DNA of 53,319 bases, the filler included, from Sluysia triapertura (taxonomy: Eukaryota), in the NCBI GenBank assembly GCA_046118255.1. It is 4 parts of 4 records of this genome, joined end to end, with 100 filler letters (N's around TTAATTAATTAA, not from the genome) between each part and the next. Parts side by side here need not be neighbours in the genome. Positions count along the whole stretch, not along the records: positions 41,997 to 53,319 come from JBJNIA010185990.1; 3 more parts are not named here. One strand, given 5' to 3'. A program made the translations under genes and the position numbers. The notes under the pieces were generated by a model. The model was not told the origin of the DNA, did no database searches, and saw only the letters and a list, made by a program, of their open reading frames with translations. Positions 17,840 through 53,319 of the stretch are shown piece by piece (the first letter of the stretch is position 1; each line of letters begins with the position of its first letter).

Positions 17840-18110
17840 TTAAAATCCTACGCAGACGTCCATTATAGGTAAATCGTTTGACGTAGGCGGACCCAAAATA
17901 TAAATTTATCATTTTTCTATAATTGTTCAGGTCGTACTAAAATCGAACATTATTATTATTATTATTGCACTTACTAAATTACACGGAATGATCGCCAAAT
18001 AATGTCGCGAATGAACCTTAATTAATGTTTGTGGATACTTATTTAAATGTGGATGTTTTTAAATGTTATAACAGTTCTTTCAGTTGTAACATAAATTTTC
18101 CCAGATATTT
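17840..18110 (+). repeat. 3' part of a Gypsy-type LTR with decayed PBS at the contig start
   Basis: 17841-17950 aligns with 51036-51137. gtaacataaattttcccagatattt (18086-18110) parallels gcaacataatttttggtgcccagtatattt at 51332. Confidence 0.6.
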
Positions 18111-41996: not shown

Positions 41997-42420
41997 ATAT
42001 ATGAGATATTTAAAGTAGAATAAAGTTGGATTTTAACGTGAGTTCACCAACGTACTAGGCTTACCAGTTAGAGCTAGCCGTTGGATTTGTAAATAAAAGA
42101 TTTTTGAAGTGAGAATAGAAAAACTGTCTAACGTGTGCGTAGTTTTACTAGGATATTCTTGGTTTATCAACTTTACTATTACTTTTTAAATTTAGTAGAC
42201 CTAGCTTAATGCTAGAGATATTTTAATAAAATTTAATGCAAAAAACTTAACGATATTTAATTTATAAATGTGTTATTAACTGAACAAATAGAAATAATTT
42301 ATAGAATATTTTACGAAGATCCCATGAAAAGGATCTATAAAAATGATTTTACGTGATTAGAGTTAAATTCTAATCGTTGAAATCTTTACTATACTGAAGA
42401 TTTTATAGTTGAAACTATTC
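41997..42420 (-). repeat. LTR-like repeat homologous to 31870-32160, at the contig start
   Basis: gtgagttcaccaacgtactaggcttacc..gccgttggattt is shared with 31878-31928; a second block of similarity lies near 42309. Confidence 0.55.
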
Positions 42421-45400
42421 AATAATGAAGGAATAAATTCTTTAAAAAATTTATTATACAATCACTGGTTTATACACTGTTATAAATAAAATAAATATAT
42501 TACGAGGAATTAGTTTTAATTCCTAAATTATTGAAATTTTAATAGTGATTTTACGTAATATCTATTATAAGATCTTTTTAGAAATAATTTACACAAATGA
42601 TTTTTAGTGGATTTTATGGGGATAATGTGTTAGTATCGACCCTTAAAATAAAATGAACTAACGTTACAAAATTAAATTATTTGAAAAAAACGAAGATTGG
42701 TTAAAGTCGATTTGAAACAATGTACGACAGCGTGCCACTGTATTAAGACTTGAGAGATCCATACAAATTCCGTATTTGTTAAAAATTTCTTTTGTGTTTC
42801 AATGTGAAAATGTGTAACTATTTATACTTGTTTCAGATCAACCTTGGTGACCTTTTAAACAATTTAAACAAATATAAAATTAAATATTAAATTAAATTTA
42901 AATATTAAATTTAACGAATAAGAATATTACATAATGCTTGCATTTTTTAAATTTAAATTAATTCCAATTAATAATGTATCAATAATAATTTCCAACGTTA
43001 AAAATAAAGATAAAATTAATCATTATTTATATAAAAATCAATAATAATAATAGTAATTTTGTTCATTTTAATTTTACACACTAAATAATCAATATAATCA
43101 ATAATAATAGTAATTCAATTTAATTGTCCACACATATAAGTAATTTTGAATTGTACACACGATACTTGATACTACACTATATTAACAGTTTGGATAAATA
43201 AAATGAAATATGGCGTTAATCCAAATGATAAATTTCCCACTGTTGTAGATAGTGATACTAAATTGTAATGAAATTAGATTTATACTAGTATATATACTTT
43301 AGTGAGGGCGTATAATCGTTACTAAAGCCGAAAACTTTAAATTTATGTTTTAAATAAATTAAGCTAACTAGAATTATATTTTCAACTAGAATTATAATTT
43401 TAATTACATATTTAGAAACAAATAAATGAACAAGATTTTTAGGCGTAAGGCCTTTTACAACAATTAAAATATTTAAAGTAAACAAATTAACCATTTTAAC
43501 AAAAAATTTATTTAATAAAAAGGAAACAAACATAATATATATAGTAACATACGTAGTATATATAAAGGTTCGATAAATAGTCGCTGAATTTGTGATGCAT
43601 TTTAGTATCTAGTTTTGATAGTGACATATAAGATTCTTTTAAAGTTTCTAATTGTAGTTTGGTCAATTTGGGATCTAGTCCGCATACTTTAGCAGAAATG
43701 ATTATTAAACAAAAACGATTTAGGAGCTTGAGTTAAATTGTGTAAAAATAATTTCATAGCAATGTTAGACGGTGACAAAGCATTAGTATATTCAATATCA
43801 TTTAAAATGATCCTGCTACTTTCAATAAATGAAATAAAACTATAGTTTTTATAAACATCTTCATATCAAAAATTTTTTAACTACATATTGATTTTTATTT
43901 ATGTCGTCTTGAAGAATAATTATTATTAATTTTAATTATTTTATATTTTAATATAATTTCAGGTTGTAAATTTTAAAAATCCACAACAATATTCATCTAC
44001 ATTTAGAGGAACAATAAGTTTTTTTGCATTTCAATGTATCAATCCAATAATAAAGTTCAGCAAATATTTGTCTGGTTAATTGATATTTTTCTAGCTAATG
44101 AATTAATGAATATTTTGAAATCATTTTCATATTTTTATGAATTGGTTTATTTTTAGCAAAAAGAACTGGAATTAAAACTGTGTTAATAGCAGTTAAAATA
44201 GTATTTGTTAATTCTGAGCTCCAGTTGGAAGGATTTTCAAACATCTCATTCATACTACAATTACTTAATGACTTTGATAAATCTAGAGTTTCATCTGATT
44301 CAAATATTATATAAATAATTCTTTATTTCATCTAATAATGGAATTACACTACAAAAAATTGATAAGAATTTATTCTATTATGAGGATAATAAGAAATTGA
44401 ATCAAATTTAGAGCAAATTTCTTGCCAAATTTCATCGAATTGATTTTCATAGTTATTTTCATAATTATTTCTGACGTTACTACACTGTTTAATTTATCAT
44501 TGCTTGTTTAGACAAATTTTATATATTTATTTTTACAAAATTATTATAAAAATTTATAATTAAAAAATTTTATTCAAATTACATCTTTCAAATTAAATTA
44601 AAATTAACAAATATAATAAAGATTTTGTTAAAATAAAAATTGTTGTTTATAAAGAAAAGTTTAGAAGAAATTGTTATAATGTATTAAAAAATTAAAAGAT
44701 GTCTACCAGTTAACAAATTTGCTTAAATAGAGAATGAAATTTTCATTTATTATTTAGTCACAATTTAATTCATTTGATATTAATAAGCCAATCAAATTTT
44801 AATTCATACTTACATCAATCCAGGTCTGACGCAGTTCATAAAATAAGCAGACAAAATTCAGTAATTAATAAGAAAAGTACTTCATCCACAAGAAATTAAG
44901 TACAAATAATCAAATTAATTTGTGAATTCGACAGTGAAGTTAATGGAGCTTTTGAATTATTTATCAGGAATTAGTATTAAATCGTTTGTTTTTACTAAGA
45001 AACTTATCATTTAGAGGAGCCATAAAATATTACCTAAACGCATTTTATTTTTTAAGATTGACTTTAAGTCAGCCACAACCTTCTAATATAACATTTTTGA
45101 AGACTCACCTTAAGCTAGCCAAAAAATCATAATTAAACTATTTGATTAATAATCGGGAATAAAGCCTAAGAAATTTTGTTCATAACATTTTTATCGCTAT
45201 TATATTTAATTGATGAAAATTGAATTTTATAATAACAATTTTGTTTCTTATAAATATTTAGACAAATTGATATTTTGTTTAGTGTTATATTATTTGAATA
45301 ATACCATTTTAGTAAATAAACGTTTATAGAGTCATTTTATTTATTTGTTGAATTTAATAAGAAATCTTTGAAAATTAAATTAATATATATTGTATTTAAC

Positions 45401-46659: not shown

Positions 46660-47335
46660 CTAATTGTAAAATTAATAAAAAAGATCAATACAAGAGGAAC
46701 ACAGAATTTTTCAACCAATATGGGAATTAAACTACTTTTTTTATAGAGCTAAAAGACAAAGCTTTATGTTTAATTTGTAAACAGACTATAAATGCTTTGA
46801 AAGATTATAATTTAAAACGCCATTATGAAATGCATTCAGAATATAAGCAGTATACGGGAAAAATAAGAGAAGACAAGTTAAAAAAATTAAAAAGTGAACA
46901 ATCATTTTTTAAAAGATCGTTTGAATGTCAAGTTCAAACTAGTTTCATTATTTCAGAACTTATAGCCAAACGTTCAAAATGCTTTACAGACGGTGATTTT
47001 GTTAAGGAGTGTATGTTAAAAACTGCGTAAGTACTCTTTCCCGAAAAAGTCAAAACTATTCAAGGCATTTCACTATCAAAATATTGAAAATAATTTGAGA
47101 AATATTCACCATTTTTCACTTGCTTGTGACAAAGATTTTACTGTGACTAAAGAACTCCTCGACATTTTATCTCTTAAAAACACCACAAAGATAGAAGACT
47201 TTTTTGAATCCGTCGCCGAGCTTTTAAGTAAATATATAATTTTTCTTTATCTAAATTAGTATGTGTATCTACAGACAGTGTGAAAACAATGACTGAAAGA
47301 AAAAATGGCTTTATAGCTAAATTATTAACTAAATA
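46660..47335 (+). mobile_element. Decayed hAT transposase, SPIN/Charlie (GTF2IRD2/EPM2AIP1-like) type, N-terminal half
   Basis: RIFQPIWELNYF, KALCLICKQTINALKDYNLKRHYEMH (BED-like finger), SELIAKRSKCFTDGDFVKECM, FSLACD, VTKELL and VSTDSVKTMTERKNGFIAKL, with stops and deletions. Confidence 0.88.
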
Positions 47336-48956: not shown

Positions 48957-51029
48957 AATAATAATAATAGTAATAAGATTAAAATTATGAATAGTTTAAT
49001 AAATTTTATGCATCAGGTTACCAGGAAGTGATTTATTTAAAAACAAAATAAAATTTTATGTCCGGATTAAGTTGTCAAATGAAAGTTTATAATTGGTCGA
49101 TTTTCTTAGATAATTGTGTGTTTAAAAAATTTAATTCTATACTCATTTCTGTATACAGTCTTTCCGGTTAAGTTCTATACATTTTGATTGCATAAGTAAA
49201 ATACATAAATAAATGAAAGTCTAAAGTGTCATTAGTTATTAAAAAGGCTTTGATATCAATGATAATTTACTTTATTCATAATAATAATATTATTATGTGT
49301 TATTAATAATAAAATATAAAGAAAACAAATAAAATTTTACACAATGTTTTCAATAAGAAAAGTGTTTCAAAATATTTCTTGAAAATAAGCATTATTTCCG
49401 AATAAGTTTCAAAATTATATTCTTTTAAGAAATTTTTTGTGTTTGAACAACGAATAAACCTTTCGGACTCGAATCAAGATAATGTGGTGAGCATTTTAAA
49501 TCTAATTCTTTGATTAATTTTTGTGTTTATTGCAAAGAAGATAAAAAATATTGTATATTTATTTGTTTAATTTTTATTTTTCTCGTTTTAACCAGTGGTA
49601 TTTGATAATATTCGATATTTGTGTTTTGCTACTTTCCTATAAAATCAAGCAGTTTAAGACTATATTGTTTCTGAAATCAGATAACATCACGTCTCTGCAT
49701 TTTCCATTCACTAAAGTCCCTTCTAATCAGTTTGTCTTTAGATGAGTGCAATAATAGAGTAATTTCGAAACTTTTAAATTTAATATTGTGAAACAAATCT
49801 CGAACACAATTTTCTAATTCCGCTGAACGAAGTAACTTAAAAACTGATACAACAGCAATATTTACTTGTAAATATTAGTTGTGATTAGTTGTGACATATA
49901 TGAATATAAAAATTTTTGTGAATATTATTTATTATTATATTATTAATTTAAATAATGACATTACATTAAAAATTAATCATGAAATCTAAAAGTACATTTT
50001 TGAAAATTATTAACGAAATTTAAACTATAAAACTTAGTTGTTTATTTTAATTTAATTGTTAATGCAAATGTTTATAAACCACTAATTATTAATGTTTATG
50101 AAAACTTTTAATTTTTAATTCAATGTCTATTATATCTATTAAAAACGATTTGATATAAAATAAACAAAAACGAAAAGTACATGAAAATAGCACATATATA
50201 ACATCTTCACGTTTATGGGACTTCCAGAGTTAAGAGAAACTAAAAGAGATTAATTGAGAGAAGAAACGCTGTTAAATTATTATTTGTGGAATCTTTTGTC
50301 ATCGCAAATTTGATTATTCTTTGGAAACATTATACATCGCAAATTCGATTAAGGCTTTTGACAAGGGTGGTGCTTATCGAAACAGTCGTCGTTATAAATT
50401 TGGACAAAGTGGTGTCTTACGAAATAGTATTCTTAAAGGAATATTGCTTGTAAATCCTGCTGCGGAATTTGTATAAATCATAATTCTAAGTAAGCCAATT
50501 TTTATAAGAAGCACTGATAAACTCTGCATTAAAATCAGTACCTAAAATCTACTATATCTACCCAAGAATTAATCCTGGGTTAAACTCAGAACTAAAATTT
50601 TTAAATTGGATATCTATTTATTATTTAATACTTTAATTTTATTTGTGTTAATATTACTTTGTTAATAATATTACTTGAGGTTTCGATTATATTTGTATTA
50701 AATAATTTTTGTATGTTTATTTGATCAAAAAAGAATTGTCTCATAAAGTATTTTGTTTTTTAGAAATGGATAACGTATTATTTATAGCAAATGATAAAAT
50801 TTTGTCGAATAATCTATTTTGTTTTTCAGAAAGGAATAAAGTACTGTAATAGAAAGCGAATTAAAATTAGTTAATAAAATCAATTAAAGGTATTTTTCGG
50901 AAGTTGAATCAAATTAGTTAAGAAGCTCAAATAAAATATTAAAGTATTTTTTGAATCATATAAGTAGCCAAAAAAAGTTCGATCACGTAATTAGAGAAAA
51001 GACAGTTTATTGATCTTTAGATTCATTAA

Positions 51030-51354
51030 GTTTTATAAAATCCTGTGGACACGTCCGTATACGATAAATCGTGTTACACAGGCGGACCAATCTTAAATTT
51101 CTTTTTATAATTGTTCAAAGCTAAGGAATGCGAACATATTTAACCAGTAAATTGTTGTGTTTTTGTTATTGATATGATTTCCAAGAGCTTAATTTGGGGG
51201 TAAATATTTATTGATATTAAGAAATTTATTTAAAATTTATATTTGATCTATTGAATACTTAAATAATTGAGATTCTTTTTAAGCTAATTAAATTGATATT
51301 TATTTTAAATAATTTAATAATTTTTAAATACGCAACATAATTTTTGGTGCCCAG
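51030..51354 (+). repeat. 3' part of a 5' LTR ending ..CAACA (51337) followed by candidate PBS TGGTGCCCAG (51345-51354)
   Basis: Homologous to 17840-18110 and located about 400 bp upstream of gag. The TGG-initial motif is complementary to a tRNA CCA end; the tRNA identity is not established. Confidence 0.6.
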
Positions 51355-51760
51355 TATATTTGTTTTGTTACAAAATTATAGAATTTTGTTACTTATTTGA
51401 TTTATATTTTGATTAATTCAGGTATATTTTTAGTGTTGCTTTGGTTAGTTAATATATATTTTATTAATTATTTGATAATCATATTTGTAATTTTTGAGGT
51501 ATTTGGCCCATTTTAAGAATTTCTAATCATTATAAGTTTGTATTTTTAAGGATTATTTTACGACTATAGTAAAATAAATAAAATAAAATTAGTTTTCAGT
51601 CTTCTTTAGTATTTCTTGTTGTTAATTAAACTTGTAAATTTTTGGGCTGTTGTTATTTAGATAATTTTAGAGAATTGTAGTGTAATTTATATTTTAATTT
51701 ATAAAGAAAAGATACTTATTTTAATTTTGCAAAAAAGAGCAGTAAAACGAAGAGTTAGCA

Positions 51761-52480
51761 ATGCCTCGAGTAAGAGTGGTTAGAAATGATAGCCGCGTGC
51801 TTCCTTTAGATTCTTACGATGGAAACCCACATAGCTTATCGCAATTTATCACTCAATACCAAATAAGCTCAAACATTGCTGGAGTGAAGCAAAACATTGT
51901 GAAAAGAAGAGCTTTAGTTGCTTACTTAAGTATATGTGAAGAAAAAAGAATGAAATGGACAAATTTAATTAAGGAATTTGAAAATCGGTTGGTTACGAAA
52001 GATACTCAATTTACAAATGATAGGGAATTTAGAAACAGAATAGAAGGAACAAATGAATCCGTTACACAATATACTTTTGATCTGAAACAGTTAGCTTTAA
52101 AAGCATTTCCCAATTTTAGTCATGACCAGAAAAATGAATTAACAGTGCAGCAATTTTTGGATGGATGCAAGGAGCCGATTCGATCAGAATTGCTAATTTC
52201 TGACGCCACAAAAATGGAAGTTAGATTGTCGATTGCTCCATATGAGGCTAGTTTTATATTGAACCAATAGAGCACCATGATATTACAGTAAGTGGAAATG
52301 CTTATGTGCCGAAATATAATTTTTTAGATAAACGTCGTAGTACACATCGTTTTGGTAGTGCTTATAGAAATTTTAATGGTGAATGTAAAATGTCTCTAAC
52401 TCCGAAAAGGAGAAGATTACCAGTATTACCGAGAAAATTTAATAATAATCAATTTTATAATGGAAATAAAAAATGAATAA
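51761..52480 (+). mobile_element. Ty3/Gypsy gag (capsid) remnant with no pol following
   Basis: LDSYDGNPHSLSQFITQY..WTNLIKEF..RIEGTNESVTQYTFDLKQLALKAFP..QFLDG is a retrotransposon gag/major-homology-region pattern. A frameshifted Asn/Arg-rich tail follows 52270. Confidence 0.85.
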
Positions 52481-53319
52481 ATAACAATAAATTCTGTTTT
52501 AATAATGGAAATAATTACCGTGTTAATAGATTCTCTAATTTTAGAAAACTGGTTCCTTTTAAAAATGACATTATGTTGGGATTGCCCAAATGTAGATTAG
52601 GAGATGAGTAAGAAACATATAAAATCATAAAATAAAGGAAAACTTATACAAATTGATGCATTGAACATTATAAACATTGTTGAAAACATTTATAATGATC
52701 CTAATAGCTAAAGAATATTTTAGGGTTCCAAAGACCTATGTAAGGGTTTGAGATCTTGTGGAAGCTTGAGATGGACTTGAAAAATTTTTGCAAGCATTAA
52801 GGTACCTTTGAACTTTAGAACTTTAGATCTTTGAAGACCTTAGTAACCTTTAAGTATTCTTGAAATATCGATAAGCATTTGAGATCCTTTAGTAACGTTA
52901 TAAAATGTATAAAATCTTTAAAGTTGTTGAGAAATAAAATCTTTGTTCAAAATAATGAAGATAATTTCATTATAGTAATAATTAACATGAAGAAGTAGAA
53001 AAAGAAATCATAGGGGTGAAGGTGAAAACATCTAGAGCCTCCTGAATGCCTTACAAACTACTAAAAAACTTCAGAACCTCAATAAAACCTTTAAACATAG
53101 AATAAGATTAAGTCTAAAAATTGATTAATTAATTAAAAATCTTAATAAACTTAATTAAGAGAAAGTACGTTTTTGTGAATAACTTTTGAATGCGTAATGC
53201 TATTGTTAGGTTGCCATCACAACCCTACAAATTAACTTTAGAACAACATAATAACATGTTAAAATTAATTAAAATCAATAAATAATCATTTAAAATTATA
53301 AAAATATCATAAAATTAAT

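What the first reader, a model, noticed from the sequence alone, without database searches (positions are those of the whole stretch)
51030..51137. Conserved, covarying bulged RNA hairpin found four times in Gypsy-associated LTRs
Seen: four loci share the layout AAAT-[P1]-[P2]-WCY-loop-GRT-AAR-[P2']-A bulge-[P1']-YGRAC. They are 17847-17887(+), 51042-51082(+), 31923-31886(-) and 42084-42047(-). P1 is CCTACG/CGTAGG, CCTGTG/CACAGG, and CCAACG/CGTTGG (twice). P2 is CAGACG/CGTTTG, GACACG/CGTGTT, GCTGG/CCAGT and GCTAG/CTAGT. The sequence changes while pairing, the single bulged A and the 3' YGRAC tail are kept, and G-U pairs indicate the element's sense strand. The two + copies also share a second stem, TGTTC..GAACA (17924-17949, 51112-51136), and their loop GTCC could pair with the tail GGAC as a pseudoknot. 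One copy is upstream of PBS+gag and another is downstream of pol. Inference: a selected cis-acting RNA (TAR-like, packaging, splice/polyA control or an unclassified ribozyme). I could not fit it to hammerhead, HDV, twister or pistol consensus.
Basis: partly seen in the sequence, partly recalled or inferred. Interest (0 to 1): 0.75.

Follow-up and report, generated by a model that had tools for sequence, protein, structure and literature searches.

The report
Conserved stem-loop in retrotransposon LTRs
Two short GC-rich hairpins in this AT-rich animal genome share a layout and flanking bases, and the one whose surroundings can be read sits between the TATA-like box and the poly(A) signal of a retrotransposon LTR, where retroviruses also keep a stem-loop, so it is a plausible but fairly ordinary cis-element.

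Summary
Both are as described: a 6-bp P1, a G·U pair, a 5-6-bp P2, a 15-16-nt loop, one bulged A, AAAT in front and YGRAC behind.

Stability alone is not exceptional, because shuffles of the piece fold as well. The link between A and B is modestly significant:
- A model built from A alone finds B as the best other hit (17.9 bits, E about 0.02).
- The unpaired and flanking bases match at 16 of 26 positions (background fraction 9e-4).
- Six of 12 pairs differ on both sides and still pair.

With two sequences this is suggestive covariation, not proof.

A lies in a credible LTR. It has a 3' end fitting the Mag-type Gypsy motif, a PBS-like site 7 nt later, and a gag ORF whose relatives carry Retrotrans_gag. 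The order is TATAAAA, hairpin, AGTAAA, GT-rich run. My best reading is a stem-loop at the U3/R border, analogous to retroviral R-region stem-loops.

Not supported: the pseudoknot, the second stem, a ribozyme, and the strand call from G-U pairs. There is no Rfam match. The TSS is unmapped and may fall inside the loop. I could not obtain more copies.

The parts
51042..51082 (+). Hairpin A. P1 is CCTGTG/CACAGG, followed by a G·U pair, then P2 ACACG/CGTGT. The loop is 16 nt and there is a bulged A at 51076. AAAT lies 5' (51038-51041) and CGGAC lies 3' (51083-51087).
   Evidence: Sequence. Minimum free energy -14.8 kcal/mol, and it is kept as a separate domain in the 319-nt R-U5 fold. Layout scan.
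42047..42084 (-). Hairpin B. P1 is CCAACG/CGTTGG, followed by a G·U pair, then P2 CTAG/CTAG. The loop is about 15 nt and there is a bulged A. AAAT lies 5' and TGAAC lies 3'. The piece ends 50 nt downstream of it.
   Evidence: Sequence. Minimum free energy -12.7 kcal/mol. Best non-self hit of the model built from A alone, 17.9 bits, E about 0.02. Flank identity 16 of 26.
51034..51040 (+). TATA-like box TATAAAA, ending one base before hairpin A. B has TATTTAC at the matching place.
   Evidence: Read from the sequence. Function is inferred. Such heptamers are common at 76% A+T.
51146..51171 (+). Poly(A)-signal-like AGTAAA (51146-51151) followed directly by a GT-rich run (51152-51171).
   Evidence: Read from the sequence. 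It fits the conserved LTR order TATA, AATAAA, GT-rich stretch described in PMC3601003.
50270..51337 (+). Putative 5' LTR of about 1068 bp. The 3' end AAATACGCAACA is well supported. The 5' end at TGTTAAA (50270) is only a candidate.
   Evidence: The 3' end matches the Mag A integrase motif RMRWMYAYAACA at 11 of 12 positions, and the 5' candidate matches TGTTRKR at 6 of 7 (motifs from PMC3601003). Summed contig depth rises from U3 towards U5. No second LTR lies in the piece.
51345..51356 (+). Primer-binding-site-like TGGTGCCCAGTA, 7 nt after the LTR end.
   Evidence: Read from the sequence. The tRNA partner was not identified, and no tRNA gene lies in the piece.
51761..52270 (+). gag-like ORF of 169 aa, truncated: it has no zinc knuckle and no pol follows.
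   Evidence: ORF list. It has 73 relatives at E<=1e-3, the best at 3e-18. Relatives carry PF03732 Retrotrans_gag and zf-CCHC. The ORF itself has no Pfam hit. It is a high-copy sequence in the genome.
51112..51136 (+).
   Evidence: The bases are there, but the stem is absent from the minimum-energy and centroid folds. It is untestable in B.

Best explanation
A and B are two diverged copies of a cis-acting stem-loop carried by LTRs of related Gypsy/Mag-like retrotransposon families.

In A the stem-loop sits at the U3/R border. The order along the LTR is:
- a TATA-like box;
- the hairpin;
- about 60 nt of spacer;
- AGTAAA;
- a GT-rich stretch;
- U5;
- the LTR end;
- the PBS;
- gag.

I take it to act as RNA on the element's sense transcript, as the stem-loops at the start of R do in retroviruses. 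Those affect expression and processing of the genomic RNA and help the first strand transfer.

Invariant features are the C-G/C-G base of the stem, the closing G-C, the G·U pair with the bulged A, and the AAAU and GRAC flanks. These are the likely contact points for a protein.

Shown here: the two hairpins, their shared flanks, the compensated stem differences, and the LTR landmarks around A.

Inferred: that the hairpin is transcribed whole, that it acts as RNA, and what it does.
For: - Both hairpins fold as drawn.
- They are the only GC-rich hits of the layout in the piece.
- The model from A alone finds B first, in register, at E about 0.02.
- Flank and bulge bases match at 16 of 26 positions, against a background fraction of 9e-4.
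- 23 of 24 cells pair and 6 of 12 pairs changed on both sides, while slid controls gave 0-1. RNAalifold gives the same helix with a covariation term of -3.5.
- The hairpin stays a separate domain in the R-U5 fold.
- LTR landmarks around A: the 3' end fits the Mag A motif at 11 of 12 positions, and a PBS-like site and gag follow.
- Summed depth rises from U3 into R/U5, as expected if R and U5 are better conserved than U3 (PMC3601003).
- Retroviral LTRs keep a stem-loop just after the TSS whose structure is conserved while its sequence is not (PMC2664473).
Against: - There are only two sequences, aligned largely by the structure itself, so covariation is not statistically established.
- Wider flanks are not alignable.
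- Stability is matched by shuffles of the piece.
- TATAAAA ends one base before the stem, so a TATA-driven start would fall in the loop. The 5' arm would then be left out of the 5' end of the RNA.
- No RNA run holds this stretch, so the TSS and poly(A) site are unknown.
- B's LTR context cannot be seen.
- The loops are not UG-rich, unlike the retroviral examples.
Confidence: 0.45

Rival explanations
1. It is a core-promoter palindrome. The two arms flank the transcription start, which lies in the loop. The conserved AAAT is the end of the TATA-like box, and YGRAC is a downstream promoter element of DPE/MTE type. The full hairpin would then exist only as DNA, or only in the 3' LTR copy of the transcript, upstream of the poly(A) signal.
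For: - TATAAAA at 51034-51040 predicts a start near 51061-51066, inside the loop.
- GGACC at 51084-51088 fits RGWYV and lies about 24-28 nt downstream of that start.
- B has TATTTAC at the same distance from its hairpin.

The spacing arguments rest on general knowledge of arthropod core promoters.
Against: - The arm sequences differ between A and B while pairing is kept. That is not expected of a protein-binding DNA site.
- B's tail TGAAC does not fit RGWYV.
- Neither loop has a conserved initiator.
- TATA-like strings are frequent at 76% A+T.
Confidence: 0.2
2. It is a chance resemblance. Two unrelated GC-rich hairpins in repeat-rich DNA happen to share arm lengths and a few flanking bases, and the reader picked them out after the fact.
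For: - Hairpins this stable arise in shuffles of the piece.
- The E-value of 0.02 is rough, by a factor of about five either way.
- Sequence-only alignment of the surroundings is at background level.
- Any two hairpins aligned stem to stem will appear to covary.
Against: - The flank-only identity test, which is independent of the stems, gives 9e-4.
- Five pairs, the G·U pair and the bulged A are identical and in register.
- Both hairpins have TTAAA starting 11 nt after the stem.
Confidence: 0.15
3. It is the terminal or subterminal hairpin of another kind of mobile element, such as a Helitron-like 3' end or a MITE. In A that element would happen to lie inside or next to the LTR.
For: - GC-rich hairpins in AT-rich DNA are typical of Helitron 3' ends (general knowledge).
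- B lies in DNA with no visible LTR landmarks.
Against: - No CTRR lies within 10-15 nt after either hairpin.
- The 15-16-nt loops are long for that class.
- A sits in the canonical order between TATA and the poly(A) signal.
Confidence: 0.05
4. It is a new self-cleaving ribozyme or a pseudoknotted regulatory RNA.
Against: - No Rfam family matches at E<=10, even with the lax filters used on short stretches.
- The pseudoknot partner is absent in B.
- The fold is a plain bulged hairpin without a conserved core.
Confidence: 0.03

Closest known systems
Stem-loop at the start of R in orthoretroviral LTRs (HIV-1 TAR, the MLV R-region stem-loop, the HML stem-loop), as summarised in PMC2664473
   Same: It lies between the TATA box and the AATAAA/GT-rich module of an LTR. 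The structure is kept while the primary sequence drifts. It is a single bulged hairpin.
   Different: - The host is an invertebrate LTR retrotransposon.
- The stem starts one base after the TATA-like box instead of about 25-30 nt after it.
- The loop is 15-16 nt and not UG-rich.
- No transactivator is known.
- The TSS is unmapped.
General LTR architecture of animal Metaviridae (Mag A, Mag C, Zam and CsRN1 models, PMC3601003)
   Same: - The 3' end AAATACGCAACA fits the Mag A motif.
- The order AT-rich box, poly(A) signal, GT-rich stretch, then ...CA is kept.
- U3 is less conserved than R/U5.
   Different: That work describes no conserved hairpin for these clades. The poly(A) hexamer here is AGTAAA, not AATAAA.
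Helitron 3' subterminal hairpin
   Same: A short GC-rich palindrome in AT-rich DNA.
   Different: There is no CTRR terminus, the loop is long, and the hairpin sits within LTR landmarks.

Membership tests
LTR of a Ty3/Gypsy (Mag-like) retrotransposon | Terminal short inverted repeats TG...CA with the clade's integrase motifs | tested here: met
   The 3' end AAATACGCAACA (51326-51337) matches RMRWMYAYAACA at 11 of 12 positions. The 5' candidate TGTTAAA (50270) matches TGTTRKR at 6 of 7. Motifs are from PMC3601003 and the sequence. The 5' end is only a candidate.
LTR of a Ty3/Gypsy (Mag-like) retrotransposon | PBS a few bases after the 5' LTR, followed by gag | tested here: met
   TGGTGCCCAGTA lies 7 nt after the LTR end. 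The gag ORF at 51761-52270 has relatives carrying PF03732 and zf-CCHC. The tRNA partner was not identified.
LTR of a Ty3/Gypsy (Mag-like) retrotransposon | A second, matching LTR and a target-site duplication | not testable with these tools
   The piece ends 2 kb after the PBS, and no second copy lies in it.
LTR of a Ty3/Gypsy (Mag-like) retrotransposon | pol with the Gypsy domain order (PR-RT-RH-IN) | not testable with these tools
   No pol ORF lies in the piece. The element is cut or overrun by another repeat after about 52280.
Retroviral-type R-region stem-loop (TAR-like) | Lies in the LTR between the TATA box and the poly(A) signal | tested here: met
   TATAAAA at 51034-51040, hairpin at 51042-51082, AGTAAA at 51146-51151, GT-rich run at 51152-51171.
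Retroviral-type R-region stem-loop (TAR-like) | Begins just after the mapped transcription start, so it is in R | not testable with these tools
   No RNA run holds the stretch. The TATA spacing would put the start inside the loop.
Retroviral-type R-region stem-loop (TAR-like) | Structure conserved while the sequence diverges | tested here: inconclusive
   6 of 12 pairs are compensated and 23 of 24 cells pair, but this rests on only two sequences.
Retroviral-type R-region stem-loop (TAR-like) | UG-rich crown (PMC2664473) | tested here: not met
   The loops are UCCGUAUACGAUAAAU and CUCUAACUGGUAAGC.
Known RNA families (Rfam 15, including hammerhead, HDV, twister, pistol) | Score at or near a family's gathering threshold | tested here: not met
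   Nothing overlaps either hairpin in the sense of the hairpin at E<=10. The only overlap is a chance-level OrzO-P match on the + strand at 42053-42105 (14.0 bits, gathering 60, E 6.7), which crosses B's site on the opposite strand.
Helitron 3' end | Hairpin followed within about 10-15 nt by a CTRR terminus | tested here: not met
   The tails are CGGACCAATCTTAAAT and TGAACTCACGTTAAAA. Neither contains CTRR.

The most novel reading that the evidence does not exclude
The hairpin is a recognition element shared across otherwise unalignable LTR families of invertebrate Metaviridae. The invariant G·U pair, bulged A and AAAUCC/GGYGRAC base would form a binding site for the element's own Gag/nucleocapsid or for a host factor. 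That would make it a packaging signal or a TAR-like control signal not yet described for this group.
Probability: 0.2. Interest if true: 0.5.

Novelty: new member of a known kind. Interest (0 to 1): 0.3.

Why it matters
Cis-acting RNA signals of invertebrate LTR retrotransposons are poorly mapped compared with those of retroviruses. A stem-loop that survives while the rest of the LTR diverges beyond alignment could serve two purposes. It would be a useful landmark for marking the U3/R border in LTR annotation, and it would be a candidate control or packaging signal. It does not change the general picture, because LTRs are already known to carry R-region stem-loops.

Tried and rejected
- **Rfam:** scanned over the whole piece and, with laxer filters, over each hairpin's neighbourhood. 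Nothing relevant turned up.
- **Further copies in the piece:** a model built from both copies found none.
- **Alignment of the surroundings:** blastn and local alignment of the regions around A and B stayed at background level.
- **More copies from elsewhere, to test covariation:**
  - The word search with gag found nothing.
  - Metagenome scans gave nothing for the window's gag. For relative P0006 they gave one contig with only 66 nt upstream.
  - Two viral-contig scans were empty.
- **Sequencing runs:** the only run holding the stretch is kept as contigs, probably the source assembly, and is not on record as RNA. Laying it gave a depth profile, but none of the 40 differences listed (of 331) falls in the hairpin.
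- **Self-priming of the Tf1 type:** no stretch near the hairpin complements the PBS, by reading the sequence.
- **Splice donor in the tail:** CAG|GCGGAC and TTG|GTGAAC are poor donor sites, by reading the sequence.
- **tRNA-like origin:** ARAGORN found nothing.

Full report
**Scope**

I say nothing about the other two. The piece is 24% G+C and looks like repeat-rich animal DNA.

**The observation**

The sequence reads:
- A: AAAT CCTGTG GACACG [16 nt] CGTGTT A CACAGG CGGAC
- B: AAAT CCAACG GCTAG [15 nt] CTAGT A CGTTGG TGAAC

RNAfold returns exactly these helices, at -14.8 and -12.7 kcal/mol with z -1.85 and -1.48. A mechanical scan for the bare layout looked for 6 bp, then 5-6 bp, a loop of 10-22 nt, and one 3' bulge, with G-U allowed. 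It found about 17 distinct hairpins on both strands. All are AT-rich and weak except A and B, and only A and B have AAAT in front and GRAC behind.

Stability by itself is not remarkable. In 50-nt windows the piece has 24 windows at or below -12.5 kcal/mol, against 2-7 in five dinucleotide shuffles. The best shuffled values (-13.3 to -15.9) equal or exceed A.

**Are A and B related?**

Sequence alone does not show it. blastn and a local alignment of about 240 nt around each hairpin score at the background of random segments of the piece. Three tests that use the motif do show a link.

1. A covariance model built from A alone, so not fitted to B, ranks B as the best non-self hit. B aligns over all 66 positions with the helix in register, at 17.9 bits and E about 0.02. 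The next hit scores 12.7 bits and lacks the helix. The calibration is rough, by about a factor of five.
2. I counted only bases that are not part of the stems: 6 nt before, the bulge, and 19 nt after. A and B agree at 16 of 26. Only 20 of 22,506 placements in the piece reach that, a fraction of 9e-4, and those 20 include A and B themselves.
3. On the structure, 23 of 24 cells pair. Five pairs are identical, including the two C-G pairs at the base, the closing G-C and the G·U pair. Six differ on both sides and still pair. Sliding the 3' partner by 1-3 columns gives 0-1 such pairs. RNAalifold predicts the same helix.

Both copies also have TTAAA starting 11 nt after the stem.

The caveat matters. 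Two hairpins aligned stem to stem will always seem to covary, so the compensated pairs count only as far as the flank test establishes homology. I put the chance that A and B are truly related at roughly 80-85%.

**What surrounds A**

Downstream of A, in order:
- AGTAAA at 51146-51151;
- a GT-rich run at 51152-51171;
- AAATACGCAACA ending at 51337;
- seven bases of spacer;
- TGGTGCCCAGTA at 51345-51356;
- an ATG at 51761 opening a 169-aa ORF.

The ORF has no Pfam hit and no word-search relatives. The full HMMER search gave 73 relatives, the best at 3e-18. Those relatives carry Retrotrans_gag (PF03732) and CCHC knuckles. The language-model look-up points the same way.

Published LTR models give TGTTRNR...YNYAACA as the general ends. 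For the Mag A clade of Gypsy they give TGTTRKR and RMRWMYAYAACA (PMC3601003). The 3' end here fits at 11 of 12 positions. A candidate 5' end, TGTTAAA at 50270, fits at 6 of 7 and would make the LTR about 1068 bp long. That end is unconfirmed, because no second LTR is in the piece.

Directly before hairpin A is TATAAAA (51034-51040). The order is therefore TATA-like box, hairpin, poly(A) signal, GT-rich stretch, ...CA, PBS, gag. This is the canonical LTR order with a stem-loop added between the promoter and the poly(A) module.

Laying the only available run (contigs, probably the source assembly) gave the following summed depths:

| Region | Places | Summed depth |
|---|---|---|
| Putative U3 | 49800-50979 | low |
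| Bin holding the hairpin | 50980-51097 | about 2,200 |
| R/U5 | 51098-51333 | 10,000-51,000 |
| Leader | 51452-51687 | low |
| gag | 51806-52277 | up to 124,000 |

This fits the rule that R and U5 are better conserved than U3. It also places the hairpin near the border. Depth from contigs is crude, and AT-rich cross-matches may inflate it.

**What surrounds B**

The piece ends 50 nt after B, so neither the poly(A) module, the LTR end nor a PBS can be seen. Upstream on the minus strand there is no ORF, only short repeated units. I cannot show that B lies in an LTR, and there is no pol in my piece.

**Mechanism**

Orthoretroviral LTRs keep a stem-loop just after the start of transcription. Its structure is conserved while its sequence is not. 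Examples are TAR in HIV-1 and the R stem-loop of MLV, which is important for RNA processing (PMC2664473).

The hairpin here occupies the equivalent slot and behaves the same way between A and B. In a fold of the whole R-U5-PBS stretch it remains a separate domain. My best reading, at about 45%, is a sense-strand RNA stem-loop at the U3/R border that acts in cis on the element's transcript. The invariant base pairs, the G·U pair with the bulged A, and the AAAU/GRAC flanks would be the likely protein contacts.

The main weakness is geometry. The TATA-like box ends one base before the stem, so a TATA-driven start would fall near 51061-51066, in the loop. If so, the 5' end of the RNA carries only the 3' arm. 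The whole hairpin would then exist only in the 3' LTR copy, about 64 nt before the poly(A) hexamer, or as DNA. That is the second reading, at about 20%: a core-promoter palindrome, with GGACC in A fitting a downstream promoter element.

Three points count against the second reading. B's tail does not fit that element, neither loop holds a conserved initiator, and a protein-binding DNA site should keep its sequence rather than its pairing. TATA-like strings are also common at 76% A+T. No RNA data exist to decide between the two.

**Claims not upheld**

- The pseudoknot (loop GTCC with tail GGAC) is present only in A.
- The second stem, 51112-51136, is 5 bp, is not chosen in the minimum-energy or centroid folds, and cannot be examined in B.
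- The strand call from G-U pairs rests on one pair per copy. Energies do not favour one strand: A gives -14.8 against -13.3 kcal/mol, and B gives -12.7 against -13.2.
- Nothing suggests a ribozyme, and no Rfam family comes near.
- A Helitron-type end is excluded by the absence of CTRR.

**Limits**

The decisive test is covariation over many copies, and I could not run it:
- The metagenome and viral collections held no usable upstream DNA.
- The reads tool gives no per-copy sequences.

**Verdict**

The feature is real and modestly supported. It is most likely an LTR stem-loop of a kind long known from retroviruses, seen here in an invertebrate Gypsy-like element. I rate it a new member of a known kind, with interest 0.3.

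Noticed in passing
window 52500-53220: This stretch just after the truncated gag has an enormous summed contig depth, up to about 1.5 million against 15-24 for single contigs. There are many internal skips and loose ends, which suggests a very abundant, internally repetitive element or satellite-like repeat. It appears to cut off the retrotransposon.
   Followed up: partly
L001 3058-4266; proteins P0006, P0007, P0054: Distant gag relatives from metagenome contigs are followed directly by an ORF of the Monjiviricetes (rhabdovirus-type) fusion glycoprotein family, PF24664. In P0007 an aspartic-protease motif follows the glycoprotein, which gives the unusual gene order gag, glycoprotein, pol.
   Followed up: partly
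window 46740-47260 (+) and 43500-44460 (-): These are broken reading frames that look, from memory, like a BED-finger N-terminus (KALCLICKQ...LKRHYEMH) and a hAT-type transposase C-terminus. Pfam gave no support for the pieces tested.
   Followed up: partly
window 50287-50351, 50736-50843; 42328-42355 and 42582-42609: There are short direct repeats upstream of both hairpins, with units of 35 and 66 nt before A. Before B there are repeated small palindromes, each followed by CGTAAAAT. This could be an enhancer-like U3 organisation.
   Followed up: no
window 51000-51008 and 42121-42129 (-): The 9-mer AGACAGTTT lies 33 nt before hairpin A and 36 nt before hairpin B. It may be a further shared motif or chance, because the wider alignment is at background level. 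A second inverted repeat lies at 42115-42151, next to B.
   Followed up: partly
window 50550-50605 (-): A stable local hairpin of -14.2 kcal/mol lies in the one U3 bin with raised depth (2,140, against about 200-450 in the bins on either side).
   Followed up: no
protein P0001 (HBK71896.1): The closest gag relative is filed as a hypothetical protein of a Flavobacteriaceae metagenome-assembled genome, on a 3150-nt contig. This is most likely eukaryotic contamination of that bin.
   Followed up: no
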